From NCBI RefSeq assembly GCF_902459465.1, contig NC_047067.1, forward strand, positions 21,452,001-21,516,000: 64,000 nucleotides of DNA. The letters are read 5' to 3'. A program made the position numbers and the translations under genes. The notes under the pieces are model-generated. The model was not told the DNA's origin and ran no database searches. It was given only the letters and a program-made list of their open reading frames with translations. Shown here one piece after another: positions 18,013 to 43,304 of the stretch. Numbering within the stretch: position 1 is the stretch's first letter; each line of letters begins with the position of its first letter. Origin of the DNA: Asterias rubens. Lineage: Eukaryota.

Positions 18013-21000
18013 ATGTCGACAGCGGCTGTTACAAGAGGACAGTCGGAGTATATTCAACCCTCTACTGCCACACAGGTAAGAAAATGTAACACATTGAACC
18101 AATTTTTCTGTCATTTTGACTAGATATGTTTGAGTCGTAGGTTTGGCCTAGTTGACTTCGTTCATAACTTCCGCAACGCTTTATTCACACCCACATGTAA
18201 AGCCCGCCCCTTGATCCATCCCGTAGATTTATTGAACAACACAAAAACAGAAATGTTGCTCTCGTCACCTCTTTGCAGGGAGACAATAGTGGCCAACAGC
18301 AGCCATCACCTCTGGCGTTGCTTGCAGCAACTTGTAGTAAGATTGGATCACCGCCTGAGGAAGCCGTGAATACTGCAACGACCACAGCCGTCCGGTTTGT
18401 TGGGCAGAATCAGGGCTTCCAAGCGGCAGATACACAAATAGGGTTTGTGGGCGCCAACGGCGTTATAACCGCCATTCCTCATGTATCTGCACAACAACAA
18501 CAACAACAACAGACACAATTCCAGACCATCTCTGCTTTTCCCGTTCAGATTGCCGCTGCCACTCCTCAGTTACAGCAACAACAGCAGCAGCTCATCGAGA
18601 CAAACAACACCAGTAAACAATCAGGTACGAATAATGGAACCAATATACTGAACTGGAACCCACAGGTGCAGCAGCACCAAATTATACAGCCATCCCAGCT
18701 TTTGACAGCTGCACCTACAAATGCAGCCAACTCGGGTGGTGCATCAGGCAATACAGTTCAGTACAACATTATTCCACAGCTTCAGCTAGATGCAGATGGT
18801 AACATTATCGCAACTCAGCTAGCGAATGCCATCAACCAATCGCCAACCATCATCCGACCAACTGCTGCATCAAACAACTTCACAGGCCTAGCATTGCAAA
18901 ATGGGCAAATTATACAGACGCAAAACAGCAATATCATGCAAAATATTGCTACACCACCGAGGGTGGCCAGTCAGCCCCTTACATTCCAACTGGCTCCGGT
19001 GGCTAGCTCAGGGGGTAATATGAACGACCAGCAACAGCAGGTTTACAGCATAGTTGCAGCAGCTCCAATGCAGCAAGATTTCACCAATGTAGTGCAGATC
19101 CAACCTCAGCAGTTTCAACAGCAACAGCAGCAGCAGCAGATAGTTGCAGCAGAGCCGCAGCAGTTGCAAGTAGTTCCCCATCAGCAGCAACAGCAAATTG
19201 TGCTTCAACCGCAGCAAGCCAATTCGATACCAGTCGGCATCAGCATGGCTCCTCAGCAAGTTCAGGTACAGTTGAATTTTTGCATATCATCAAAGAAAAG
19301 GTATCTCTATGGTACAGCTTTGAAGTCTACTCAATTAAAACATGTTAGCCTGTTAAATTAGAAAAAGGACTTTGCTGTATAAAAAGGTACAGCAAATTTA
19401 TCTTGTTTCTACCGTTGTTGAAAGTCAAGTAAAAATCCTTCAATCGTAGCAAATATTATTTTGAAAGAATTTGTCCATATCACAAGGGAAGTGGTTCAGT
19501 GATTTGTGTCGTAGCACATTTCAGTCATAAGCCATGAAATTATAGTTTTGAGCATGTTTTCCTTCTTTTTTAACCATTGACAATTTTTGTTCAAGTTAAA
19601 TTTAAAACCACTTGTACTTTTGTTTTGACTTTCAAAGCAGTCACTGTACCTAATAATATTTCTCACTCATCATTTTTATTGTGGTAGATTCAGCAGCCTC
19701 AACAGAACTCGGGAACCACAGTTACTATTCAACAACAGCAACCACAACAGATAAACATCCAGGCTCGCCCACAACAGCAACAACAGCAGCAGCCTCAGCA
19801 ACAGCAGCAAAGCTTCACTGTGCAGCCTGTTCAGCAGGCATATGCAATCCAACAAGGACAACCACTGCCGGTCATTAATGCCTCTACCTCAGGGCAACAG
19901 ACCATTACAATCCCTGCCCAGACAGTCACTGGTCAACAGGGTTTCCAGAACTTCATCTTACAACCACAGAACCTAAATGCAGTTCAAACAATCCAATTGC
20001 CCGGCCAGCAACAGACGGCGACCATCTTGCCTGGCTCTATCTTTACGACCCTCCGTTCTCCTAATAACACCATCAACCTTCAAGGGTTACAGATACAGGG
20101 GATCAGCATGGCTGGTACAACGTCCCAGCCTCAACAAACTTTAACATCTACGGCAGGGATGGGGAATACTGGTTCCGTTGCTGGAACACAAACTGTCACA
20201 GCCTTACCCAATTTCAGTTTATCAACGGGGAATTTGGTTTCTATGGGAATGCAGCTACAGCAGATAAGTAAACCGGGAGCAGGAAACAACACAAGATCCA
20301 CTACAGTCACAGGTAGGTTTGAAAAAGCTATTTGACTCATCGTCGATGTTTCAATGTCCAGGTTGTTACTTTACTCTACCTGCTCTTAAGTAGGATGTTT
20401 AAACTTTGAGGTTTTCAGTAGCACCATGTGTAAATCTCTTTTAAGTAGTGTTGGTTTTAAAAAGAACTGGTGTTTCTAATGACTTTTTCATTCTGCTACT
20501 GCAAACTTCACAATTAAAAGCGCATTGTTTGGCATAATGTATCTTCCACAACTGCAGTGGATGGTATTGAACTGCTAGACACTGACAGTAAAGTGCTGCA
20601 ATACCTTTTGGATGTTGTGGCTTCTTATTAGTTGGTAGTTGATTAGCAGCTTGTGGGTGGGGCCAGCTGTCAAATGGGCATTCAATCAACCCTTATTGAG
20701 TCGCTCACCTCCATTCACTCCCTCTGACTAATTTGCTTGTCTCCACTTTTCTCCTGTCCAACTTATTTTGTTAAAATTTGGCCAATACAATTTAATGAAG
20801 GCTCACTTATTGTGTTAAAATAAAACAAAAATTGGAATAGTCTTCCCAAGATTTCCACATTCCTAAGAAAAGGCTTTGCATCATCTTTATTTAGATATAA
20901 CATGCAGCGAGTAACGAAAATACAGAACAAACTTATTTTGATGCAGAATATATTTTTGGGTGAGCACTCAATTATAATTTCACTCAGGCTCTTGTATAAA

Positions 21001-23371
21001 CTCTCTTTTTAAGTTGTCTGGTATCTACTTTGATAAGGTCTCCCCCAAACCAAACAAAATCAAGATAAAGGGTATTTCAGGTCAAGAAGTTAGATTTGGT
21101 GGCCATCAATCATCCTTTCATACCAATAAGACATTCCTTTAGGCTTTGCCTCAGACTGTTGACCTTTGTACTCCCTAAAGGTGTGTGTTACTTAACCTCA
21201 TATGCATTATCGACATTGTACCGAGGCATTACTTTATAATACTCTTACATGTGGACAGCAACATCAAGAGAAATGGAAGACAATAAGAGTATAGCATTTG
21301 GAATTATTTAAATTCTCCAATCTTGTAAAATAAAATGTAAAAAACAAGATTGTCATTTCACTTCCAGACATACCTTAAAATTCATGACATTTAACAAAAA
21401 AATAAGTTGTTGAGGAGAACACAATTTTTCAGAGGAAATATGTTTTCTAACAGAATACTCATTTGTTACTATTCTTTGTGTCTCGTGTCTCTTTTAGTTG
21501 CACAGCAGCAGCCTGGTACTCTTCAGGATAAGAAGTGGCAAGGGCAAACACAGGTTATTAATCCGGTGCAGACTAATACATCCATTAGTCTGGACAATCA
21601 GTTTGTAGGGTCAGATGAGGAAGAGAACCAGGGACAACAGAACCAGGTGCCTAAGCGGCTCAGGAGAGTGGCATGTACATGTCCCAACTGCAAGGACAGT
21701 GAAGGAAGGTAGGTGCATGTAGAATATAAAAAGAGCCTGTCGGTACTACAGGCTTGGAATAACATGAAGGCCATGTATGGCCCCTGTTGCCCCTGGACGT
21801 TGCCTTGGTGCCAAAACAATTTCACATACACTAGACTTTTGATTTCGCAATTGAAAAACTTTTAAAGTGGCACCAAGGCCAACACCAGGACAACAGAGGT
21901 CATGACCGCAGTAGCCTTTGTGTAAATTCCAGACCAACAACCTTCTTGTCTTCCTTTAGTATAAATACAGCTTGAACTTTGAATATACAACTTTAGGTTT
22001 GACAATAAATCTTTATTCAGCCACTTACTTCATCCTTCATAAGTTTTAGTGAAAATGATGCTTTAGATCTGGACCAAATTTCATGGTTCTTCTTCTTTCA
22101 GAATTCTGTGCTAATGGCTCAAAAATCTACATGCTTAACAGCCCACCGAAGGTACAGAACTCCGCAGTAATTAAAGCCATGAATTAGGATCCAGACCTGC
22201 ATGCAATTTTCGTTTCTGAAAGACTTTTTTTGCTCACCAAAATAGGAATCTGAATGCAGAGGGTCGCAAAAAACAACACATTTGCCACATGCCAGATTGT
22301 GGCAAAGTGTACGGCAAAACATCCCACCTTCGAGCTCATTTACGATGGCACACAGGGGAGCGGCCATTTGTCTGTAACTGGTTGTTCTGTGGTAAGAGAT
22401 TTACAAGGTCAGATGAGCTACAGCGACATCGGCGGACTCATACAGGTAGGGTATTAGTGACATTTCTTAATTTTTGATGTAAATAATCCAAATAATCCAA
22501 TATTCCAAAAATCTGCGCCTTGAACACCCAGCAGAGTGGATATGTGCGCATTATAAGTCTTATTATTATTATTATTATTATTATTAAAGGTATCACAATG
22601 TACGACACTGTATATTATGACCAATATGGGTATGTGGGAACCCCCTTCCCTCAATGTTCCAATATTTTAACACACTGTTTGCCTCTTGTACGGAAGTACC
22701 CCCCCCCCCTTCCCTAAAATTCTCTGAAAGAATTTCTGTGATTCCAAGCCCACATTTGAAAACACAGTAAGCCCCATGTTTGAGCTGATGAAGAAGAATT
22801 TTACAAAAAGCACTGATCATATACTAGTTATATCAACTGCGCAAAATCCACCCCAGCTTTACAAAGTTGTAAACGTGTAAAATTGATGTAAATATAAAAG
22901 TTCAAGCATTTAACAATTAGCAATGTAGGATTTTGACTGGTGTAAACTAGTCACAGGCATGCATGCTTCGTTAATATGGAAATTTCTACTGGAGCATTCC
23001 AAGGGCACCAAGGCAATGGCCAGGGGGCACAGAGGCAATCGCCTTCGTTGCCTCTGTGAAGTATCAGGCCTGTAGTCATCTTCAGGATAACTAATACATT
23101 CTCAACAATTATATTGAATTTCCCAGGAGAGAAGAGGTTTTCCTGTCCGGCTTGCTCAAAGCGCTTCATGAGAAGTGACCACCTCTCCAAACACATCAAG
23201 ACTCACTCCAATAAGAAAGCCAACCCAAGGGATGATGAGTTTAGTGACGGTACAGTGACACTGGAAATGGATGGAAGTGAAGTGATGGCCACTCCAGACC
23301 AAGAGGCCTTGACCAATGCTGTGGTCATACGGATGGGTACACAGGCTCTGGACAGAATGGAAGCCAGCTAG
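18013..23371 (+). CDS. Sp1-4: Sp1-4-clade (Sp1/2/3/4-like) transcription factor, 776 aa. Exons 18013-18075, 18279-19265, 19688-20312, 21498-21708, 22246-22445, 23127-23371.
   Basis: It has an Sp2-like N-terminus [21 protein letters not shown], the Sp box [14 protein letters not shown], long Q-rich domains and the btd box [12 protein letters not shown]. Three canonical fingers carry KTSHLRA / RSDELQR / RSDHLSK. All GT-AG junctions are phase-compatible (2331 nt). Confidence 0.96.
22555..22586. repeat. (ATT)n microsatellite in an Sp1-4 intron
   Basis: A ttattattattatt run is visible in the sequence. Confidence 0.85.
22954..23072. mobile_element. Dispersed short repeat family (gggcaccaaggcaa core, caggcctg ends); relatives at about 21770-21935, 39072-39195, 40510-40630, 40995-41070 and 59570-59620
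   Basis: The ggcaccaaggc(a/c)a motif and caggcctg-like boundaries are shared across these intronic and intergenic copies. Confidence 0.55.
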
Positions 23372-26925: not shown

Positions 26926-27334
26926 TTATTTATAAATTAGTCCCACTAAATGTACGGATGCGTTCGACTACCAGTAGTAGCATTGACCTCCTGTGATTTC
27001 TTCCTCTTTGTAGATGGTCTATCTTACAATAATTAATATTACAAAATGTTGGGGGGGGGGGGGGTTCCAGCCTTGTCAGCTGTCTGCTGAATCATTCATG
27101 AATTGAATTGAATTGAATGTCTTTAAAATTTTATTAACAAAAACTAAATTATAAAGAATAACAATTTAATTTACAATCTTGTTCCAGAAATGATTTCTAC
27201 TTTATTAAAAAGTTTTATTTGATTAAAGGAAACACTACACTTGTTTGTAAGTTTGTTGACGTCAGGGTTATTTAAAATCCAAGGCCTGAAAAATGACTCA
27301 CTCCTTTATTCTCAGATTGAGTTTTTCATACATC

Positions 27335-30300
27335 ATGCAAGCTTTGATTGATGTCAAACCTGATGAGAAGCCAAAACTCTTCTGCATCTGCAAGACACCA
27401 GATGACGGAGGGTAGGAATTTATTTTCTTAGATTAGAAGGGCCTCTGTAGAATTGTACAAGGCAGTATATGCAATTTCTTCTGATGTACTTTATGTGTTA
27501 TTCTCATGGAGCGTTCTACCTGAACAGTTTTCCTCTGTTCAAATGCTAGTTAAAACACCTGAGGACCAGTCAAAATTATCTCTAAGTGGTCTGGCTGGCT
27601 TGAATGTAAAGTGATTGTAGAAAGGCATCAATATTTAGAATGGATTAGGACTAGTAAAGAAGATGGTAGACAAGTAAAATGACAAGCTTACTGTTTCCGC
27701 AAAGGGTAAACACTGAAATAGTTAAGGGCAAACTCTGTCATGGAATCTATTTTAATTATTTATTATTTTGCAACCACAGGCGCTACAAATAATTTATTGT
27801 AGATATCGCATGTGTCTTGAGTAAATACCTTTCCTCCTTTTAGGATAGATTTCCTTGACTGTTTAGGACATTTAACCTTTAGAGAATATTTTTGTTGATC
27901 ACTTGATCTAATAGATAGACACAATGTGAGATGCCATGTAAAAGTTCCATTATGTTTGCACATATAGAAATGCAAAATAGTTAGACCAATATTTTTTTAT
28001 TAGTCATGTGGAATATGATAATAACATTCACTGTCGGAATGATTGATAAGTTATCACAATTGAGCATTGTACATAATGGCCGTATTATGTGACACTCTTT
28101 CAGGTTCTACTTAGGGTGTGACAGCTGCCAAGGATGGTTTCATCCAGTCTGTGTGGGTGTGGCCCAACAGGATGCCAAAAAAGACGGAGCATGGCACTGC
28201 CACGCCTGCACATCTAGGATTGCAGGTGACCCTGCAAACAAAGGTAACAACAAACAGGGTGTGAAACAACCAGGCAGGCTACTCGTGTGGGATTCAAACC
28301 CAAAACCTTTGCCATTCCAGAGAAGATGACGAACAACTGGACAACCTCATTCTTTAATCATTTATTACCTTGACAATCATTCCCCCTTGTGTGGGGTTGA
28401 CCAAAAAAAAACTAAAGGTTAACTTACTTTGAGAAAGTTTGTGTATGGTTAACAACACGTCTTGAATAGAACCCCGGACCACTCGGCCACCAATGCTCTA
28501 CTATTTCTTTCTATACTTTCTGCTTTTTCTTTCATGAGAGGCTTGTTAACACTCGCTGCACAGGGGCCTAGTTTGGCAGAGCTGCTAAGTAGATTGTGTT
28601 ACTGTGCACATTATTGCTAAGCAATCACTAACAAGGGAACAGTCTTGTGCACATCTTCACATAGCATTGCTCTGATAGTGACCTGTTTCTGTATAGCACA
28701 CATTTTCTCCTGTGTGCTGTAAGCAGCTCTACAAAATAAGCCGCTGTGGTTTCTCTCAAACTCTTAGCGCACATTTACACCCTGTCGGTATTGTGCCCTG
28801 ACTCCACATCGCTTAATTTTCCTTTCAGCTGCAAATGAGCACCATTGGCCTACTGGTCCCTTCATTATACCAGTCTCTGAGATGCCAAACGAAAACCCTA
28901 AATCCCCTGAAATTCCCGACCTTGCAGTTGACATACCCAGCCTTGCTGACGAGCTCGCCGACCTGCAGAACCCTCAACCTCAGCAGCAGCAGCAGCAGCT
29001 CCACAGCCAGGGGATGATGACCGGTGTCGCCCAAGGGACCGCTGATTGCCAAGGAGGAGCGTCTACTCGGACAACAATGGCGGAGGTTAACAACGAAGGG
29101 ATGTCCATGAGACCTAGACGGGAACGATGTTGCTGCCCTTACTGTGAAGAAGACAGAAAAAAGTAAAAACTCTTCTTCTTTTTTCAAGTTTGTGTTTTTT
29201 TTTTTCAAGTTTGATTTTTTCTTTCTTATTTTGTTTAAGTATTTGGTTTTGGGTATTTTTGGCATTCTATTTAGCAAACATAGTAGGCATGTAAATTTTG
29301 TCCAGACACGCCTTCAAGCAGTTTTAAAAGCTGTGCAAATTTCCATTTGTGTTAGTTGTTGGCAACCCGGCAAAGGGTTACATATATGTAACATTTTCTG
29401 ATTGGGCAGTTGGAAAGCTTCAACTTGCCGACCAGCTAAGAAAAGCTGTCTGCCATAATGAAAACCAGGCTCACTGGGTAGACCACTCAACATTTTCAAG
29501 ATTTTTGTTCTACGAATACAACTTTGAAGAAACAGCTCTTTTAAAAAAACACTTGCAGTCTTGTTCCTAAATAACATACACCATACTGATTGATTGACTC
29601 TTTAGGAGTGGCATCACCCTAGGGGTCAGAGGTCACATTTGCCACATCCAAGCCTGCAGTCGCGTGTTTGCGAAGTCAACAGAGCTCAAGGCTCACTCAA
29701 GGATTCACACCGGTCAACAGCAAAATGTCTGCGACTGGCCGGAGTGTGGAAGCAGTTTCTGGCGATCTGATGAACTCCTGCGACACTACAGGACTCATAC
29801 AGGTAAGGTGTTCCGGAAATGATTTTAATTTGAAGTTTTGGTTTTGTTGAAAAAAAAGTTTAAAATGCCTGTAAATGATACACGTGTTACATTTGTTGTT
29901 GCTGCTACCACTTTATCAATTCTGATTAATAACCCTTTTTCCCCCAGAAGTTTTTACAGAAAATAATCTTGCTAGTACAATCACTGTCAATTATTACCTT
30001 TTTGGAAAGAACTTTTTTATTACTTGAGCCCAAATAATTCTTTCTGTTTGGGGTTTGAAATTCACAGCCAGACGCCGCAAAGCTAAAACCACGCCCAGTA
30101 AAGTGGTTGGGGAATTGCCGCACATCTGCGACTGGCCATTGTGTGGGCGGGGCTTCAAGCGGGCTGACAAACTCCAACGACACTACCGGACGCACACAGG
30201 TACAAATATCACAAACAAATTATCATTAGATAAACCTCCCTACTCTCATGATCAAGTTATTTGGGGCTTGACAAAGTTAAGGTGTCACTAATTCCATACC

Positions 30301-32984
30301 TTTTTGACCTGTGCATGTTGAAATAGTGGAGTTTGTCAGCCCATTCATTTAGAGATCATCTTTGGTAAAATTAAAAAATGTTTAGTGAATTGAGAACATT
30401 TGTAACTTTTTTCCTTTCTTCACAGCTTCTTAACTTCATGATCCTATAGAAAGAAACTGGCACAATTTAAGATGAGAATATATTTTTGTTGAAAAGTTTC
30501 TTTTTTTTCTTGTCTACTGGGAACCAGGAGAGAGGAAGTACCAGTGTACACAATGTCTGAAGCGGTTCCTGCGTAGCGACCATCTGTCCAAACACGTCAA
30601 GACGCACGATAACAAGAAGACTAGAGGTCGACGGAAGCAGACTGGTCCAGCGAGTGCAGATCAGAACATGATTGTGGACAACGTGGTGCCCATAGCTGGG
30701 GGAGGAACATCCAATACTGGTAAGGAAAGGAAGAGAAGCGTTTTAATTGTGAAATACATTTGATTTTGAAATTGATGTTTATGTCTTATCAAGATTTTAT
30801 ATATACTTGTGGATATAAACTTTGTATTATCCCATTGAGATGTACATATCTTGTTGATGCCTGTTGGTACACTATTGATATCTTATTGATAATTGGTTGA
30901 TATTTGTTGACATAATTAATATCTTGTTGAAATTGTTATAATGATCTTGTTGAAATTGTTTATTTCTTTGTGATATCTTGTTGGTATTTTATTGATAAGT
31001 GGTTGATTTCTTGATGACATCGTATTGTGTTCTTACTTTCATAATATCTTGTTTATTTCTTGTTGATATCTTGTTGATGCTTGTTGACAAAATGATATCT
31101 TGTTGGTATGTGTTGATTTCTTGTTGATACGCTTAAAATGTGTAGATATTTTGTGTAGATGCATTTACATTGATGATATAATTTTTGGTTATATATCTTG
31201 CTTATTGACTGATTTACCTCAGGAAGTGTAAAAGTCCAGATTTCACTGTGTGATTATATTCTGCGGAAATGTACTATTATACATCCAACATTTGTATAAT
31301 AATAAACGGCTGTTTTTATATATCACATTCTACTGATATGTTTTTTTATAACCTACTGAAGTATTTATATTTTATTATATTATGTTGCCAATTCAATTTG
31401 ATGAGACTTGTTGTTGTTATTTGTTGTTGTTGTTTATCAGTTGGTTATAATCAAGCTCCCATTGAAGGATCGGAAGAAGAGTCTAAAAAACAAGCAGCTG
31501 CCCAGAAGAGAATACAAAGACAGCCCTGTAGCTGCCCCAACTGCGTGATGGACACCAACAGGTAAGATGGTATACCCAACATACAGTTGGTGAAAGATAT
31601 TTTATGTCATTCAATTCTACTCAATTATTTAAATTTTTATTTTACAGTTGTTGGTATCATTATAAAATGTTGCTAAAGATTTTGTGTGTACAATTTCAGA
31701 CACGAATGACAACAATTTTTTGGGGCCACGACTAATGGTATCTTTGCTTATCATTATTTGTGTAAAAAAAGCATCTCTGGTACTTGCGTTGCTTTAGAAA
31801 TGTGTTATTGGGACATACACTTATTATAATAATTTATTCCTAATAAAATCATCTACAACCTCATCAATTTCCTACTAATCATCAAAATTCTGTTTTTACT
31901 TTGTGGAGTTGTTGCACTTAATATTTGCATCTTTTGTGTTGACAGATTGAAATTATGTTAACTTCCAACATTAGTTTCATCCAAACATTATCTCTTTCTG
32001 AATTTGTTTTCATTCCAATAAATGAGAATAAAGTTACAGCATTGTTTGAGTTAGTGCCCTTTATTCAGAGATACTTTTTGTAGACTCTGAGTTAATGGAG
32101 TTTGTGTGAAGTAACATTTGCCTGATTTCCCCTTTACAGGCAACCGGGTGAACCAAGTCCCTTTGGTCCTAAGAAGCATTTATGCCACATTGAAGGCTGT
32201 GGTAAGGCCTTCGCTAAGACGTCCCACCTTAAGGCTCATATCAGGGGTCATACCGGGGAGAAACCTTACATCTGCTCATGGATGGGATGTCAAAAATGCT
32301 TCACAAGGTCAGATGAACTACAGAGACACTCCAGGACTCATACAGGTAAACAATAAAACCAAATCAGCAATTAATAAATACATCGTTTGGTTATTATCCA
32401 CTACTAAAATTGGGTCAGTTTGAATCTGAAACCTGATAATAAATAGTTCTTCCTAAAATACTGTCAAAGTTAACCACAAAGCAGATGAAGATTTTGACCC
32501 CCCTCCCCCTTAAAAAACATTCCCCCCCCCCCCTGCAATTAAGTAAAACCTGACATTATCTAACAAAATCTTTTACTAAACACTCTTTGTTGTTTTCACT
32601 AAAAGATGAGAAATGAAGTTATCTAAGGTTGGTTTTATTTGATTGTTGAATCCTTATTCAGGGGAGAAACGCTTCTCATGTCCAGAGTGCCCGATGAGCT
32701 TCATGCGCAGCGATCATCTCTCAAAACACGTCCGGACGCACGACAACAAGAAGACCCGCGTACAGACGCAAGGGGAACGAGGTGAGAAGCGCCATCAATG
32801 TCCAGATTGCCCCAAGCGTTTTTGGCGAAAGGACCACCTAAAGAAGCACGCTAATACTCACCCAAACCCACAGGGTAACACTCCTAATCTCAGTAGTATC
32901 CAAGCGACGCTGCAGATCATTAATCAACCTCAGTCTGCACCCATGTCGGAAAGTTTGCCTCCGTTGGCCTCAACCTCTTCTTGA
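27335..32984 (+). CDS. Sp-derived chimeric factor: PHD finger + Q-rich + btd box + 4 C2H2 fingers + btd box + 4 C2H2 fingers, 573 aa. Exons 27335-27411, 28104-28243, 28829-29162, 29606-29802, 30068-30199, 30528-30719, 31441-31561, 32140-32345, 32662-32984.
   Basis: The PHD reads [12 protein letters not shown]|[19 protein letters not shown]...WHCHAC. The btd boxes are [12 protein letters not shown] and [13 protein letters not shown], and there are eight Sp-type fingers. All eight introns are GT-AG with compatible phases, giving 1722 nt without an internal stop. Splicing of the two modules into one mRNA is inferred, not proven. Confidence 0.85.
30846..31130. repeat. Degenerate satellite with a unit of about 11 bp (gatatcttgtt)n in the intron between the two Sp modules
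   Basis: Repeated atatcttgttga / atttcttgttga variants. Confidence 0.75.
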
Positions 32985-33789
32985 ACTTTGTATTGTCAAT
33001 GATTTCTTTTTTAAATCAATTTTTATTTCCTCTCAAAGATTTTTATTGTGAAACTTCCAAGGTAAAAAGTGAAACACTACTTCCAAAATCTGGGAGGTAC
33101 TGGTTGTTACCCTAATCTTCTTCTCAACAAAAGATAAACAATATCAGATAAATAATGAGTGACAAAACAAATCAACAAAAGGAAACAAAATTCTGATACC
33201 AAATGTGTGCGATCTTTGAAAGTAAAAAAGCAGTTTTATGGAAGTGTGCTTTCATAACTTGCTGTATTTCTTGAAGACCCAAGGCTTAACAGCATCTAAA
33301 AGCTTAAGATAATACAATATAATTTGTTTTAAAGCAGTAGTGTTAATTTTGTACATTATTTTATTTGTGTGTAAATTCACTTTTTTTTTTTCCCCCGTAA
33401 AAGTTTATTGTTGATAGTTTAGTCTGAGAGCATTATGAAGTCGTGTTTGATTATTTAATTAGAAATGTTTTTTATTCTAAATGTTGTGTTGTTTATATTT
33501 CTGAGATCTGCTTCAAACACTGAAATAACACCGAGTGTATTATGGTGTTTGGTGTTTGCTTAGTGTCGAGACTAACTTTACCCTGGCCAGTCTTTTCTGC
33601 TTGTGATGGGTCTGTACCAAGAATGATTAACTAGCGTTTTTAGTAATAATCACCAGTTGTACAAATATACTCAAATATAAAATCAAGAAGTCATTATTTT
33701 AAAATGAAAATAACTTCCTTGGCCAATCGTCACTGTTGTTTGTCTTCAGCCTGTTAAGCACTGAGACAAATCTGTCTTGGTAGGTTACT

Positions 33790-38329: not shown

Positions 38330-41300
38330 TCAGAATTCTTTTTTGATATCTGTGGAGGAAAGAAAACATGCTTGATTTATTGACAACTGCAAATACAAGT
38401 CCCTTCACTATTAGCTCAATATGCAGTTGTGTACATCAGCTTTGCGGATGACTATTTCTTGCTACTGTAGCTGATCATTTCAGAACTTTGTTAAGTGGCA
38501 TGAGAATGAATTGCCATTTATGAATCACATCTTGAGTCAACCTACTATCATTATTGTACCCTTCTTTCTGCTCTTCCGAGATGGTGAGCATTTGGACTCA
38601 TTATTTACTACTCAGGGAGCCATTCAATGACAATGAGTCAGTCGATTAATCTGGGTTTGTTCTTGTGAGTCACAATAACTCAAATAGTTATTTGCGGAGT
38701 AGAATCTGGAGTCACTCGTCATACACACGAGATAAAATACTCACCACTTTGCTCAATTAATTTGCCCTTCCGTGTGCCTTCCAAGCCGGTGACAAATTGC
38801 TCAAATACTTGGATGCTCTTCAATAAACTCGTCTTCTTATAATCTGATTAGTGAAAACAAGAAAACATAAACTTATCACTTTGTGGATTGTAGTCCAATG
38901 TCATAATGTTGGTCTTAGTTGGTGTGTGCAAAAGAAGTTAGGAGTATTGTTTCTCACGGTATAAAACAGTACCAGACTATATCCTCTTCCAACCAGATTT
39001 TGATTATTTGAATATTCATGAAAGAGGTCACCAAAGTGGGTCATGTTGGACAATAATTACTTGCATACTCCAGGCCTGTAAGCTTCGTTTTTGAAAGGGC
39101 AAGGAACCCAAGGCATTTTCTCCTTATAAAGGGGCAACCTATAAGGAAGTTGTCAACTTCTACTGGGGCATTTTAAGGGCAACAAGGCAATGATACTCCC
39201 ATCTCAATGATACTCGCATCTCTCTGTAAACTTGACAATGGATCAAAAGCTTCTGGTTTCAGTTAATTCAGATGAATCTAGCGTATTATTCAAGCCTCAA
39301 CATTTACCTTCAGACTTGTAACTCTCTTGCCTTCCAGTCTCATTTTACTTCTTGAATAAAAAAGGTAAAACACAACTTAGAGGTTTTTCTTCTTCAAGTC
39401 TTACCAGGGAAACCTTCATGTACCTACCCTTAATCCTCTTCTTTGATGGAGGCTCATTTTCATCATTTGTAGCTTTTTGTTTTCTGTCAAACTCATCAAT
39501 TTCCCTGCACAGCTGGCTGAATCATTGAAAATAAAAGAAAGTTTTTCCTAAATTAAAACAGGCGGCCAACTTTGGCGATTGTCAAAAACCACTTAACATC
39601 ACCAACATAACATAAAACGAAAATCAGAGTCACAAGAAAATACAATCTTCAAATTTGGGACTTACAAGATCAAAAAAAAGTTGATCATAAACTATAGTAT
39701 TTCAGGCCAAAATATTTCAAGGAAACTTTTCCACCACAACCCTCTTCGTACCATGTTAGTTATGTTTAAACTGTAACAACTTTTGTATCTTGTGAATATT
39801 GAGTACACCCTTTAAGAATCATTGGAAGTAGAGTTGTGATTTGTAAAGTTTCGACCATGCTCGAAAAGCTTACACACTAACACAAAGTAGGTTTGAGTTT
39901 TAATTCTTAAACACACTGGCAAAAATCCTAGGCTACATTACACCTTTGCACATCAGGTCTGGGTCTACTACATTGGAAGTAGAGGGCAGAGAGGAAAGAA
40001 ATATCTTCACCTAATATCAGGGACAGTGAATGGATCAAAATTGTCCACATCTTTGGCGTCGAATGCAACACAGACTCTGCCCGTTTTCGGATGGACACAG
40101 AATGGACTCTTGAGTAAATGGTTGATTCCTTTACTGACGTTGACGTCCAAACGAGGGTAACAATACTGGAACTTGATCTCTGTTACAAGGTGCTGGCACT
40201 TCTTGACATTTCCCTAAGACAAGGAAATATGGAAAAAGTTATCATGGCTGTTTTCCGAGGTTCAAGAGATATGACAAATAATTGGTAGTTTGAAATTGCT
40301 TATTCTGGCTTTGAGATGGCTTACTTTGCTGACTTCCCCCATAATGCATCTCTCTAAACGATCCCATCTCTCGGCTGATGTTTTGGCGCGCTCCATCTGC
40401 TCTGCAAGTAGTTTCCTAAGATGTGAGGGCACTATATAGTCAAGGAAGAGCTTTGCAATTAATAGAACACTTCTTTGTTTATTTGGATTCTTTCTTGAAA
40501 GAACATGTCTGGAATTTCATCTTTGAGAGGACAGCGATATTTTTATTTTACAAAAGGCACTTCCAAAGGAAAATCTATGAGAAACTTTAGAAAGGGCACC
40601 AAGGCCAAGACCAGGGCATTGGAAACCATGTGGTGAACCAGATTTTCTGAAAGACTTATGAAAACAATGAATCTTAAAGATACTTTTTTTTTTCTTCTCA
40701 AGAGCTTTGTGTTTAAAGGATATTAGAATCATTGACAAGGGTCAAGACTTTCTCCCACGATGCTTTGTCTTCCATCAGACCCTGGTTCCGCAGAGCATAT
40801 CCCTCAAAATAGTGATTGATGATTCGTTTGGCTTGCCTGAAGAAGGTAAAAAGAAGAAACGACATAATTGGATTAATGTATTAAACTGAAGTGTGTGAAG
40901 CCTGCTCAATGCTTAATTTATCTGAGCACTTCAACCAATAGCAACACATACTAAACGTGTGGACCATATTTTATATCACTGATGCGCCTTAGCAGGCCTG
41001 GAATTTCATCTTTGAAAGGGCAAGGCCATTGGAAACTTTTGAAGAGGCACCAAGGCAAAGACCAGTCCATCGCCTATGTGTAACTCCAGCATGTGCCTGT
41101 CAAACAAATAACTATGAATGGCTTGGCTGCAAAATGGATTTCTTGGCAATCTTATTGTATGGGGACTGTTTTATTATCACTACTTACTCGATGGAAGGAT
41201 GTAGATGCTCTGGAAGACTCACTTTCTTGACTTGGTTCTCACCCCCCTGTTTAGTAAAAAAATATTTGAGATAAAGCCTGAAATGTTTGGTTCGAGACAC

Positions 41301-43304
41301 ACATTTGAAGGTTTAAAAATGCACTGTCATATTCAATCCCCACCCCCTCCTGTCAATACACAAGTCTTACCTTCACAACACTCAAGTATTCTGCAATTGC
41401 TGAGCGTGCATTCTGGGATAGTTTCCTGGCGGCCTCATCAGCGACCCAACAATGAACTCCTCTCCGGCCAGAATAAACCCACATGCGATGATCGAACCCA
41501 AAATCATCTTAAATACAAAAGAGACATAGAATTTAAATTATAATTTCGACTGATTTAAGTAAATATCAGGCAAGCAACTGCAGCTTGTCTTAAATTGCCA
41601 GGCACAGCGAGACAGTGAATGAATCAGCTAAAACATTGCATATGGATAGTGTATGTGTCTGTGTCTTGCTTTCCTGTATAAAAATAAATTGATAACAATA
41701 ATCGTATAAGACTTGGAGGAATTCCTATGCATCTTTGTTATTCTATATTTTTGCACCGTCAGCAGAAAACATCGGTCACACAAAACTTTCACAAGGGTTT
41801 CCCTTCTTTTTCTGAAAAACTTGGCAATCAGCTGATAGGATTCACAAGTTTGGTAATTGGTATTCACCATTGACAGTACAAAGGGACACAGGAAGCTATT
41901 TACAATCCTTCCCCCTTTCTGGTTGTGAAGTTTAGAGAAGAATAAATGAAAGTTGTGAATACCATGAAGTGCTCGATCAACGATGCGGACTGCAATTCTC
42001 ATAAGCGGCCAGCACTTTTCACAAATATCAGCTCCCCTAAAAGATGGAAGAGAAAAACATATAGAATTTTTATTTTCAAATGTAATTACTCCATTCTTTG
42101 GATGAAAATTTAGCCGTTTACTCAGGAAATACTGCCTTGACTTTACGAGATCGAAGTATCAGGCCTCTGTAAGTAGTAACCATGCCCATTGCCCCATAAC
42201 ACTACTACATGGTATAATAATTTCTGGGTTGAAATGCTTCCTCTATAACTTACTGACAGCACACCCTGACATCATCGTAGTCTGTCATATCGATATCAAA
42301 TACAAGTTCCTTCTCTTGAGCTTGAAAAGATGCTGCTTTCACTGTCCTGTGATCCTTCGGCTGAAATATAAACAAAATATAAATAATCAAAGAACATTTC
42401 TGCAATTCCCCCCTAATGAAAATAAATCTTTCTTTGTGGAAAGTCTTAATTTGTTTTGAAGGCAATCTAGCTATCATTGATGGGGTTGAAAGTGAGGGGC
42501 ATCTACGACAGTTTGCATTTTAAGGTCGATTAAATTCCTAAATGTCATTGGTGTTGCTTACTTACCCGGTGAGTGAAGACTGCGCCGATATCAATCTTGT
42601 AAGGACATCTTTTCTGTATTTCTTTCTCCATCTCACTCTGATCGGCAAACGACTGGTAGCGAATGTAGATATCATCTTTTAGCGTGAATGAGAACTCACG
42701 ATTCTGGAAGTACGTCTTAGGCACTAAAAAATGAAATAAATCATCTGCAGTTAAGAATCATTCATGGACAATTATGTCATTGAACATTTGGTACTCTCGG
42801 ATGTACCTGTGTCTGTTTGGTATGTACTGTTGTTTAACTTATTGACAAAAGAAACATGAACCATGTGAATTGTTTTATACACTAGTGACTACACAGTCAT
42901 GACAATTTCTGGTTTTATTTTAAATTACACACAACACAAGTAACTTAAATTAACTATCAAGCTAAGAACAAGAACTGAAGCTAATAGTAATATAAAAGTC
43001 AGTACAAGCACCGACAAAAACTAGCTAAATTAATGATAGGACAAGGTTGATCACAATGTTTACAAAATAATGAAGTTTTTATTTATTAATAATTTCATCT
43101 TCCCAATGCCAATCAATCAATGCAATAATGGCCAATCAATCCAATATTAGTTGACATTGTTCGCTTACGTCCGCCGTAGTTGAGCCAACGGTAGTACTGA
43201 TTATAAGGAAATAGACGTCTGTAGTACAAAGGCAATAATTCCGGCAGCTCATCCTGAGAATATGTAGATTTTGTTGTTGTTTCTGAATGATCGTTGAGCG
43301 CCAT
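38330..43304 (-). CDS. PRIM1: DNA primase small (catalytic) subunit, 430 aa. Exons 43169-43304, 42566-42723, 42254-42360, 41963-42036, 41371-41507, 41188-41246, 40724-40836, 40325-40422, 40011-40213, 39428-39516, 38745-38843, 38330-38349.
   Basis: The translation includes [99 protein letters not shown] and DYKKTSL. The CDS totals 1293 nt in frame. Confidence 0.97.
40423..40723 (-). other. U12-type (minor spliceosome) AT-AC intron in PRIM1
   Basis: The 5' end is ATATCCTTT, the branch site is TTCCTTGAC (40439-40447 on the reverse strand), and the intron ends in AC about 16 nt downstream. Only this boundary keeps the primase reading frame. Confidence 0.92.

What the first reader, a model, noticed from the sequence alone, without database searches (positions are those of the whole stretch)
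27335..28243. The captured PHD finger looks like an H3K4me3 reader of the BPTF/DIDO/Cfp1 type, with one cage substitution
Seen in sequence: [36 protein letters not shown]...WHCHAC has an intact Cys4-His-Cys3 pattern, split by a phase-2 intron at GG|F. Established: the BPTF PHD (LYCICKTPYDESKFYIGCDRCQNWYHGRCVG) binds H3K4me3 through an aromatic cage. Here the first (F), third (Y) and fourth (W) cage positions are aromatic, but the PY tyrosine is Asp. Inference: the finger was copied from a BPTF/DIDO/PHF3/CXXC1-like donor gene. It may prefer a lower methylation state, since Asp in a cage often favours me1/me2. Either way it could target an Sp DNA-binding domain to active GC-rich promoters.
Basis: partly seen in the sequence, partly recalled or inferred. 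Interest (0 to 1): 0.72.

Follow-up and report, generated by a model that had tools for sequence, protein, structure and literature searches.

The report
BPTF-type PHD finger on sea-star Sp factor
Sea stars carry a transcription factor in which a histone-tail reading PHD finger of the BPTF type, missing one tyrosine of its methyl-lysine cage, is spliced onto a doubled Sp-type DNA-binding module; the fusion is real, expressed and conserved, but what the finger binds is still only inferred.

Summary
Window 27335-27411 and 28104-28243 (+) encode a complete Cys4-His-Cys3 PHD finger, split by a phase-2 intron just before Phe-Tyr.

RNA contigs from three studies and raw RNA reads from a fourth show this intron spliced. 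They also show PHD exon 2 joined to the Btd-box and zinc-finger exons.

My nine-exon model translates exactly to RefSeq XP_033628745.1 (Asterias rubens, "zinc finger protein 436-like", 573 aa).

Only Acanthaster planci and Patiria miniata have PHD-plus-Sp orthologues, with the same intron and the same neighbouring genes. The first 27 PHD residues are identical in all three genera although synonymous sites are saturated.

The closest relatives by sequence and by predicted fold are BPTF/NURF301 PHD fingers, then Cfp1/Spp1, Pps, PHF2/8 and DIDO.

One correction: multiple alignment shows the cage Tyr (BPTF Y17) deleted, not replaced by Asp. D23 matches BPTF's conserved D18. The loop then has Cfp1's length, and CFP1 prefers me3.

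H3K4me2/3 reading is likely (about 0.65). A preference for lower methylation states is possible but not indicated. This is a new architecture built from known parts, and I found no paper on it. The scan noted the same gene on this window before (s1-150076).

The parts
27316..27334 (+). 5' untranslated start of the first coding exon. The acceptor lies at 27315|27316, and a further upstream 5' exon exists but was not located.
   Evidence: RNA contig X2 record 5 covers 27315-27410 and carries 61 further bases upstream that do not lie in 27200-27315. The sequence reads ttctcag|attgag.
27335..27411 (+). PHD exon 1: start codon, then [25 protein letters not shown] plus 2 bases of G26. Zinc ligands C17 and C19. 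Cage F16 at 27380-27382. Acidic pair D23-D24 at 27401-27406.
   Evidence: the model equals RefSeq isoform X1.
27412..28103 (+). Phase-2 GT..AG intron inside the PHD finger, immediately before Phe27-Tyr28.
   Evidence: The joint is seen in X1, X2 and X4 contigs and in 6 raw reads of X13. Position and phase are the same in Patiria and Acanthaster and in both PHD fingers of the own BPTF gene.
28104..28243 (+). PHD exon 2: [18 protein letters not shown]...WHCHAC...ANK, with a phase-1 donor. Cage Y28 at 28108-28110 and W37 at 28135-28137. Zinc ligands C31, C34, H39, C42, C58 and C61.
28829..29162 (+). Linker plus first Btd box ([10 protein letters not shown]). An alternative acceptor at 28928 removes 33 codons (isoform X2).
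   Evidence: Joints 28243|28829 and 28243|28928 in RNA. P0275 and P0276.
29606..30719 (+). First Sp finger module, in three exons: 29606-29802, 30068-30199 (a duplicated finger-2 exon specific to Asterias) and 30528-30719.
31441..32984 (+). Second Btd box (CSCPNC) and second finger module, in three exons: 31441-31561, 32140-32345 and 32662-32984 (ends at the stop codon).

Best explanation
Shown: the two exons encode a BPTF/NURF301-type PHD finger. It forms the N-terminus of a transcription factor found only in sea stars (Asteroidea). The rest of that protein is a tandemly doubled Sp-type DNA-binding module, each half a Btd box plus C2H2 fingers most like Sp4. The finger is part of the same mRNA and has been kept under strong purifying selection across the three sea-star genera for which orthologues were found.

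Inferred: the finger binds the N-terminal tail of histone H3 with methylated Lys4 held between F16, Y28 and W37. The fourth cage wall of BPTF (Tyr17) has been deleted, which leaves a loop of Cfp1 length with Asp23/Asp24 beside the pocket. The likely ligand is H3K4me3 and/or me2.

Inferred: one polypeptide would then read GC-box DNA and promoter-type chromatin together, as CFP1 does with its CXXC and PHD domains. This would bias the factor towards already active or poised GC-rich promoters.

Inferred: the finger reached the Sp gene at the DNA level by exon shuffling that kept the intron, from a BPTF-like gene, no later than the last common ancestor of those three genera.
For: - One transcript: RNA joints 27411|28104, 28243|28829, 28243|28928 and all downstream joints appear in contigs of three studies and in raw reads of a fourth. 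The data look like two Asterias species: X2 has 0 differences from the window, and the others carry A. amurensis substitutions.
- Gene model: my nine-exon model is identical to RefSeq XP_033628745.1.
- Family: Pfam PHD E = 5.1e-10. BPTF PHD is the best solved relative, E = 1.1e-14. The AF2 model has a core pLDDT of 74-84. Its best Foldseek match is BPTF bound to H3K4me3 (2f6j, rmsd 1.1 A, 47% identity), and every top match is an H3K4me2/3 reader.
- Exhaustive HMMER with exon 2: after the self hits, the best hits are tandem PHD-bromodomain proteins. The named ones among those looked up are NURF301.
- Cage: W37, Y28 and all zinc ligands are invariant in the alignment with BPTF fingers.
- Conservation: [27 protein letters not shown] is identical in Asterias, Acanthaster and Patiria. 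Synonymous differences there are 0.66-0.81 per site with no amino-acid change.
- Orthologues share the intron and the flanking genes.
- The intron position and phase are shared with both PHD fingers of the own BPTF gene.
- Complex test of the PHD with the animal's own H3 tail (residues 1-40): ipSAE 0.35 against a best control of 0.02. The tool's verdict is 'weak support'. In its calibration the mark was reached by 51 of 78 solved complexes and 2 of 108 mismatched pairs, but a pass at 0.60 or under is more often wrong than right unless it was likely beforehand. The runs agree in at least 92% of contacts, and partner pLDDT is 55.
- Precedent for the logic: CFP1 uses its CXXC and PHD domains together at CpG islands (PMC5603731).
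Against: - No binding measurement exists.
- One of BPTF's four cage residues is missing and the loop is shorter, so affinity or specificity may differ.
- The complex score is a weak pass and may come from the model's memory of solved PHD-H3 complexes.
- The AF2 model is only moderately confident (mean pLDDT 68.8).
- The PHD tree does not resolve whether the finger descends from the first or second BPTF finger, and gives no supported clade beyond the sea-star trio.
- The shared intron also seems to occur in a Cfp1/PHF2-like paralogue.
- Restriction to Asteroidea rests on protein databases, not on genome searches of other echinoderm classes.
Confidence: 0.65

Rival explanations
1. The finger is a reader of lower methylation states (H3K4me2 or me1 preferred over me3). 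With the cage Tyr gone, an Asp carboxylate (D23 or D24) hydrogen-bonds the dimethyl-ammonium proton, as in the engineered BPTF Y17E.
For: HMMER aligns D23 with Glu17 of the BPTF Y17E mutant (PDB 2ri7). 2ri7 bound to H3K4me2 is the third-best structural match. PMC4589357 states that BPTF Y17E selects Kme2 over Kme3 by direct hydrogen bonding. The DD pair is invariant in three genera.
Against: The multiple alignment puts the gap at the Tyr and aligns D23 with BPTF D18, which is conserved in fingers that read me3. The Drosophila Cfp1 finger aligns without gaps and has Asp opposite D23. Mammalian CFP1 prefers me3: 1.3 uM against 9.1 uM for me2 (PMC5603731). Whether either Asp reaches the pocket cannot be told from a model of moderate confidence.
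Confidence: 0.25
2. The finger no longer reads methyl-lysine. It binds unmodified H3, another histone site or a non-histone partner, or it serves only as a structural or interaction module of the transcription factor.
For: One cage wall is lost and the loop is shortened. PHF2's PHD, a close structural relative, also binds a non-histone N-terminal peptide (7m10 and 8f8y). The complex prediction gives only weak support.
Against: The Trp two residues before the zinc-binding His (W37), Y28 and F16 are kept and invariant. All the best sequence and structure matches are H3K4me2/3 readers, whereas H3K4me0 readers such as AIRE, DPF3 and KDM5B PHD1 score far lower, E about 1e-3 to 1e-5. The half of the finger that carries the cage evolves far more slowly than the other half.
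Confidence: 0.2
3. The donor was not BPTF but a Cfp1/Spp1-, PHF2/8- or DIDO-type gene.
For: The loop has Cfp1's length and the Drosophila Cfp1 alignment is gapless. A Cfp1/PHF2-like PHD at C17:5727510 appears to have an intron at the same place and phase. The PHD tree has no supported node joining the sea-star finger to BPTF.
Against: BPTF scores about 11 bits higher than Cfp1 (57.6 against 46.2). Among the top 150 of 1.84 billion representatives, the best hits after the self hits are BPTF-like tandem PHD-bromodomain proteins. In the own genome the best paralogous hits are the two BPTF fingers and a third PHD on C17, while the Cfp1-like exon scores E = 7.8.
Confidence: 0.15
4. The PHD exons belong to a separate small transcript and are not part of the Sp factor.
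For: None found. A 177-aa database 'protein' (P0001) that covers exon 2 is an unspliced read-through of intron sequence.
Against: Direct RNA joints link PHD exon 2 to the Btd exon in four runs. Exon phases fit throughout. RefSeq models exist in four sea-star species. RNA depth over the PHD exons is similar to that over the finger exons.
Confidence: 0.01

Closest known systems
BPTF / NURF301 PHD finger next to the bromodomain (PDB 2f6j, 2fui)
   Same: Best sequence match (E = 1.1e-14). It shares the KLxCICKTP...FYxGCDxCxxWxH core, the Cys4-His-Cys3 ligands, three of four cage residues and the predicted fold (rmsd 1.1 A). The phase-2 intron before Phe-Tyr is also present in the sea star's own BPTF gene.
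   Different: Cage Tyr17 is deleted and the loop is one residue shorter. No bromodomain follows and the protein is not a NURF subunit. The finger sits at the N-terminus of an Sp-type DNA-binding protein. It is only 40-44% identical to the animal's own BPTF fingers.
CFP1 / Cfp1 / Spp1 (PHD plus CXXC; PDB 9c0o, 6j2p)
   Same: Second-best sequence match, with a gapless alignment and the same loop length, and an Asp opposite D23. The logic is the same: one polypeptide combines an H3K4me3-reading PHD with a domain that binds GC/CpG-rich DNA (PMC5603731).
   Different: The DNA-binding part here is a set of sequence-specific Sp C2H2 fingers, not a CXXC domain. No SET1-interaction domain is evident. 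Cage position Y28 is Met in Cfp1.
Engineered BPTF Y17E (PDB 2ri7)
   Same: An acidic residue lies where the cage Tyr would be in one of the two possible alignments. It is the third-best structural match.
   Different: Y17E is a substitution in a loop of normal length. Here the Tyr is deleted, and the Asp is more likely the counterpart of D18.
Sp1-4 clade transcription factors
   Same: Btd box followed by three C2H2 fingers, 55-68% identical to Sp4 over the aligned finger region. The gene lies directly downstream of a canonical Q-rich Sp gene.
   Different: The DNA-binding module is doubled inside one protein. An N-terminal PHD finger replaces the Q-rich activation region.

Membership tests
PHD finger (Pfam PF00628) | Cys4-His-Cys3 zinc-ligand pattern with canonical spacing | tested here: met
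   The spacing is C17-x-C19-x11-C31-x2-C34-x4-H39-x2-C42-x15-C58-x2-C61. All eight ligands are invariant in A2.
PHD finger (Pfam PF00628) | Profile score above the curated threshold | tested here: met
   39.7 bits against a cut-off of 24, E = 5.1e-10.
PHD finger (Pfam PF00628) | PHD fold | tested here: met
   The AF2 model matches BPTF, KDM7, PHF2/8, DIDO and Spp1 PHD structures with probability 1.00. Model confidence is moderate.
BPTF-type H3K4me3 reader PHD | Full four-residue aromatic cage (BPTF Y10, Y17, Y23, W32) | tested here: not met
   F16, Y28 and W37 are present. The Y17 counterpart is deleted: TP-DDGGFY against TPYDxxKFY.
BPTF-type H3K4me3 reader PHD | Closest sequence relatives are BPTF/NURF301 fingers | tested here: met
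   However, the tree gives no supported clade with them.
BPTF-type H3K4me3 reader PHD | NURF301 architecture (tandem PHD followed by a bromodomain) | tested here: not met
   The finger is followed by Btd boxes and C2H2 fingers, and no bromodomain is present.
BPTF-type H3K4me3 reader PHD | Binds the H3 tail trimethylated at Lys4 | not testable with these tools
   There is only an in-silico H3-tail docking test with unmodified lysine: ipSAE 0.35 against a best control of 0.02, verdict 'weak support'.
Cfp1/Spp1-type PHD | Short seven-residue loop between CxC and Phe, with an Asp in it | tested here: met
   Gapless HMMER alignment to 9c0o, with D23 opposite Asp.
Cfp1/Spp1-type PHD | Accompanying CXXC domain or COMPASS-binding region | tested here: not met
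   Pfam lists only PHD and C2H2 families for the whole protein.
Sp family (host protein) | Btd box (CxCPxC) directly upstream of three C2H2 fingers | tested here: met
   There are two such modules, with CCCPYC and CSCPNC boxes. The best named relatives are Sp4.

The most novel reading that the evidence does not exclude
Sea stars evolved a transcription factor that is gated by chromatin state. Deleting one cage tyrosine from a captured BPTF finger produced a natural counterpart of the engineered Y17E reader.
Probability: 0.2. Interest if true: 0.7.

Novelty: new variant of a known kind. Interest (0 to 1): 0.5.

Why it matters
Sequence-specific animal transcription factors rarely carry their own histone-methylation reader. 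The combination is usually split between a DNA-binding factor and a recruited cofactor.

Here a GC-box binding module and a BPTF-class reader sit in one polypeptide conserved in three sea-star genera. That gives a natural test of whether multivalent DNA-plus-histone reading, as shown for CFP1, can be built into a classical transcription factor.

The invariant loss of one cage tyrosine is also a natural experiment on how cage composition sets methyl-state preference. It can be tested with a 65-residue domain.

Patiria miniata is an established developmental model in which the factor could be studied.

Tried and rejected
- Separate-transcript idea: rejected by the RNA joints.
- 'Tyr replaced by Asp': rejected in favour of deletion of the Tyr.
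- Recent copy of the animal's own BPTF: rejected. Own-genome hits are only 39-43% identical. The two BPTF fingers are 40-44% identical by my count from the sequences, no closer than human or nematode BPTF.
- First or second BPTF finger as source: not resolvable. There are 51 alignment columns and no supported node. Pairwise scores overlap, best B 178 and best A 166.
- Intron position as proof of a BPTF donor: weakened. A Cfp1/PHF2-like PHD exon on C17 starts at the same place. I could not identify that gene from 3 kb of context.
- P0001 (177 aa) as a 'small PHD protein': it is an unspliced read-through artefact.
- Exact look-ups of orthologue isoforms X2 found no contig. The X1 isoforms did.
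- tRNA search in the repeat beside exon 2: nothing found.
- Literature searches for a PHD-Sp fusion or for this gene: nothing found.
- The 5' exon upstream of 27316 could not be located, because the only read-laying run had been used.
- Complex prediction gave only 'weak support' and is not counted as evidence of binding.
Full report
**What is there.** The window is from Asterias rubens. It lies at G000:C6:21452001-21516000, and my model is identical to a RefSeq A. rubens protein. On the + strand, 27335-27411 reads [25 protein letters not shown] plus two bases of a Gly codon, followed by gtagga. After tttcag, 28104-28243 supplies the third base and [46 protein letters not shown], then one base and gtaaca. 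The joined 73 residues score as a PHD finger in Pfam (PF00628, E = 5.1e-10, 39.7 bits, cut-off 24).

**One gene, one transcript.** Splice phases allow a continuous reading frame through nine exons: 27335-27411, 28104-28243, 28829-29162, 29606-29802, 30068-30199, 30528-30719, 31441-31561, 32140-32345 and 32662-32984.

I laid public RNA data on 27200-33100. The PHD intron joint occurs in contigs of three runs from three studies and in 6 raw RNA reads of a fourth. PHD exon 2 is joined to the Btd-box exon in two ways. One joint is at 28829 (three contig runs, with only 28 bases on the short side). The other is an alternative acceptor at 28928 (three contig runs plus 3 raw reads, 33 codons shorter). 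All downstream joints are seen, and single contigs of 2.5-2.8 kb run from the Btd exon to the 3' end.

Run X2 has no differences from the window. The other runs carry fixed differences that match the A. amurensis protein, such as R153Q. The splicing therefore appears in what look like two species. Both fixed differences in PHD exon 1 (27343, 27373) are synonymous.

The translation of my model equals RefSeq XP_033628745.1, "zinc finger protein 436-like isoform X1", 573 aa. Isoform X2 (540 aa) uses the 28928 acceptor, and X3 (529 aa) skips 30068-30199. A 177-aa database entry that covers exon 2 (P0001) is an unspliced read-through and not a real product.

**What kind of PHD.** Against all solved structures the best sequence match is the BPTF PHD finger (2fui, E = 1.1e-14). 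Next come Drosophila Cfp1 (9c0o, 4e-11), yeast Spp1, Drosophila Pps, PHF2, DIDO1, PHF8 and TAF3. Readers of unmodified H3K4 (AIRE, DPF3, KDM5B PHD1) are far weaker.

An exhaustive HMMER search of 1.84 billion representative proteins with exon 2 found two self hits. The best hits after them have two adjacent PHD matches, and 54 of the listed proteins match my bromodomain pattern. The named ones among those I looked up are NURF301/BPTF (Toxocara, Caenorhabditis).

An AlphaFold2 model built on an alignment with these fingers has a mean pLDDT of 68.8, and 74-84 in the core. Its best Foldseek matches are human BPTF PHD-bromodomain in the H3K4me3-bound state (2f6j, rmsd 1.1 A over 55 columns, 47% identity) and the free form. 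The Y17E mutant bound to H3K4me2 (2ri7) follows, and then KDM7, Pps, PHF2, DIDO, PHF8 and Spp1.

**The cage.** BPTF's cage is Y10, Y17, Y23 and W32. Those positions follow the 2fui numbering shown. Which residues form the cage is established knowledge from Li et al. 2006, cited in PMC4589357. The counterparts F16, Y28 and W37 are present here. Y28 and W37 are invariant across 46 aligned fingers.

The fourth position needs a correction. The stretch between Pro and Phe has four residues (DDGG) against five in BPTF (YDESK). MAFFT places the gap at the Tyr column, and D23 falls in the nearly invariant Asp column, BPTF D18. HMMER does the same against wild-type BPTF, and shifts the gap only against the Y17E mutant. 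The Tyr is best described as deleted.

The shortened loop has the length of the Cfp1 loop. The alignment to Drosophila Cfp1 is gapless and has Asp opposite D23.

BPTF Y17E does prefer Kme2 (PMC4589357). Mammalian CFP1, however, prefers me3, with Kd values of 1.3, 9.1, 64 and 373 uM for me3, me2, me1 and me0 (PMC5603731). The sequence therefore does not decide the preference.

**Is it functional?** PHD-plus-Sp proteins were found only in sea stars. They are the Asterias rubens and A. amurensis isoforms, Acanthaster planci XP_022093913/4 and Patiria miniata XP_038073120/1. After these, profile scores fall from about 1000 bits to 325 bits, for ordinary zinc-finger proteins and Sp4 without a PHD. 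Among the 150 best PHD matches, only the sea-star cluster also has C2H2 fingers.

In the three genera the segment [27 protein letters not shown] is identical, while the N-terminal 160 residues overall are only 43-44% identical. On the orthologous DNA (L017, L018), synonymous differences in those 27 codons are 0.66-0.81 per site with no amino-acid change. The remaining 22 codons show 0.17-0.28 non-synonymous differences per site. The half of the finger that carries the cage and the DD loop is under strong constraint.

The orthologues have the same phase-2 intron and the same phase-1 donor after exon 2. They also have the same neighbours: an Sp-like gene upstream and the DNA primase small subunit downstream on the other strand. 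In the window the primase gene is at 40058-41523.

**Origin.** The animal's own BPTF gene (C7:12981722-12984835) has two tandem PHD fingers and a bromodomain. Both fingers are split by a phase-2 intron in the codon just before Phe-Tyr, exactly as here. This argues for a DNA-level capture that kept the intron, not a retrocopy.

Three caveats apply:
- A Cfp1/PHF2-like PHD exon at C17:5727510 also appears to begin at this position and phase, so the intron is not diagnostic of BPTF.
- The finger is only 40-44% identical to the own BPTF fingers, no closer than to human or nematode BPTF. The event is therefore old.
- A maximum-likelihood tree of 189 fingers groups the three sea-star fingers (100) with BPTF second fingers as nearest neighbours, but without support.

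BPTF/NURF301 is the best-supported donor family. The particular finger cannot be named.

**Mechanism proposed.** It is shown that the PHD is the N-terminal domain of a protein whose remainder is two Btd-box/C2H2 modules of Sp type.

It is inferred that the PHD docks on the H3 tail. A complex test with the animal's own H3 residues 1-40 gave ipSAE 0.35 against a best control of 0.02, and the tool's verdict was weak support. In its calibration the mark was reached by 51 of 78 solved complexes and 2 of 108 mismatched pairs, but a pass at 0.60 or under is more often wrong than right unless it was likely beforehand. The runs agree in at least 92% of contacts, partner pLDDT is 55, and the pass may come from memory of solved PHD-H3 complexes.

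It is inferred from the retained F16/Y28/W37 pocket that methylated Lys4 is the ligand. By analogy with CFP1 (PMC5603731), combined reading of GC-box DNA and H3K4 methylation would stabilise the factor at active or poised GC-rich promoters.

My odds are:
- Part of the Sp factor and of BPTF class: above 0.95.
- Binds H3K4me2/3: about 0.65.
- Prefers a lower methylation state than me3: about 0.25.

**Novelty.** The gene model exists in RefSeq under uninformative automatic names. I found no paper that describes a PHD-Sp fusion, and a survey of KLF/SP domain architectures does not mention PHD. It is a new architecture made of known domains, with a natural variant of the BPTF cage. The scan had already noted the whole gene on this window (s1-150076). 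My exon model and the RNA data agree with that note.

Noticed in passing
window 28829-28927: An alternative 3' splice site at 28928 drops 33 codons of the linker between the PHD and the first Btd box (RefSeq isoform X2). Both forms are seen in RNA, and the raw reads of X13 showed only the short form (3 reads).
   Followed up: partly
window 30068-30199: This extra exon encodes a duplicated second zinc finger (ARRRKAK...[26 protein letters not shown]). It is present in Asterias but absent from the Acanthaster and Patiria proteins, and isoform X3 skips it. It looks like a recent exon duplication within the gene.
   Followed up: partly
window 28260-28330 and 27544-27575: Dispersed repeats lie in the introns beside the PHD exons. 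The first starts about 17 bases after the exon 2 donor and has at least 43 copies in the genome at 78-95% identity. Both give very high RNA depth and many loose ends that come from other copies. ARAGORN calls no tRNA there.
   Followed up: partly
window 18273-23371 (+) and 40058-41523 (-): A canonical Q-rich Sp gene (Btd box [10 protein letters not shown], three fingers) lies 4 kb upstream of the PHD-Sp gene. The DNA primase small subunit lies downstream on the other strand. The same order is seen in Patiria miniata (L017) and Acanthaster planci (L018).
   Followed up: partly
window, upstream of 27316: An RNA contig extends 61 bases beyond the acceptor at 27315|27316 into an upstream 5' exon that I could not place. 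The frame is open from 27316 to the ATG at 27335. The orthologues instead start six codons earlier, within the same exon.
   Followed up: no
window 28316 joined to 29841 (read-laying table 5c): Contigs and reads join 28316 to 29841 with about 17 foreign letters in between. Both ends lie in repeat-like intron sequence, so these probably come from other copies of a repeat rather than from this locus.
   Followed up: no
L004 (G000:C7:12981722-12984835): The sea-star BPTF orthologue has two tandem PHD fingers before its bromodomain, as in Drosophila NURF301. Its introns carry repeats related to each other (for example L004 540-760 and 1140-1380).
   Followed up: no
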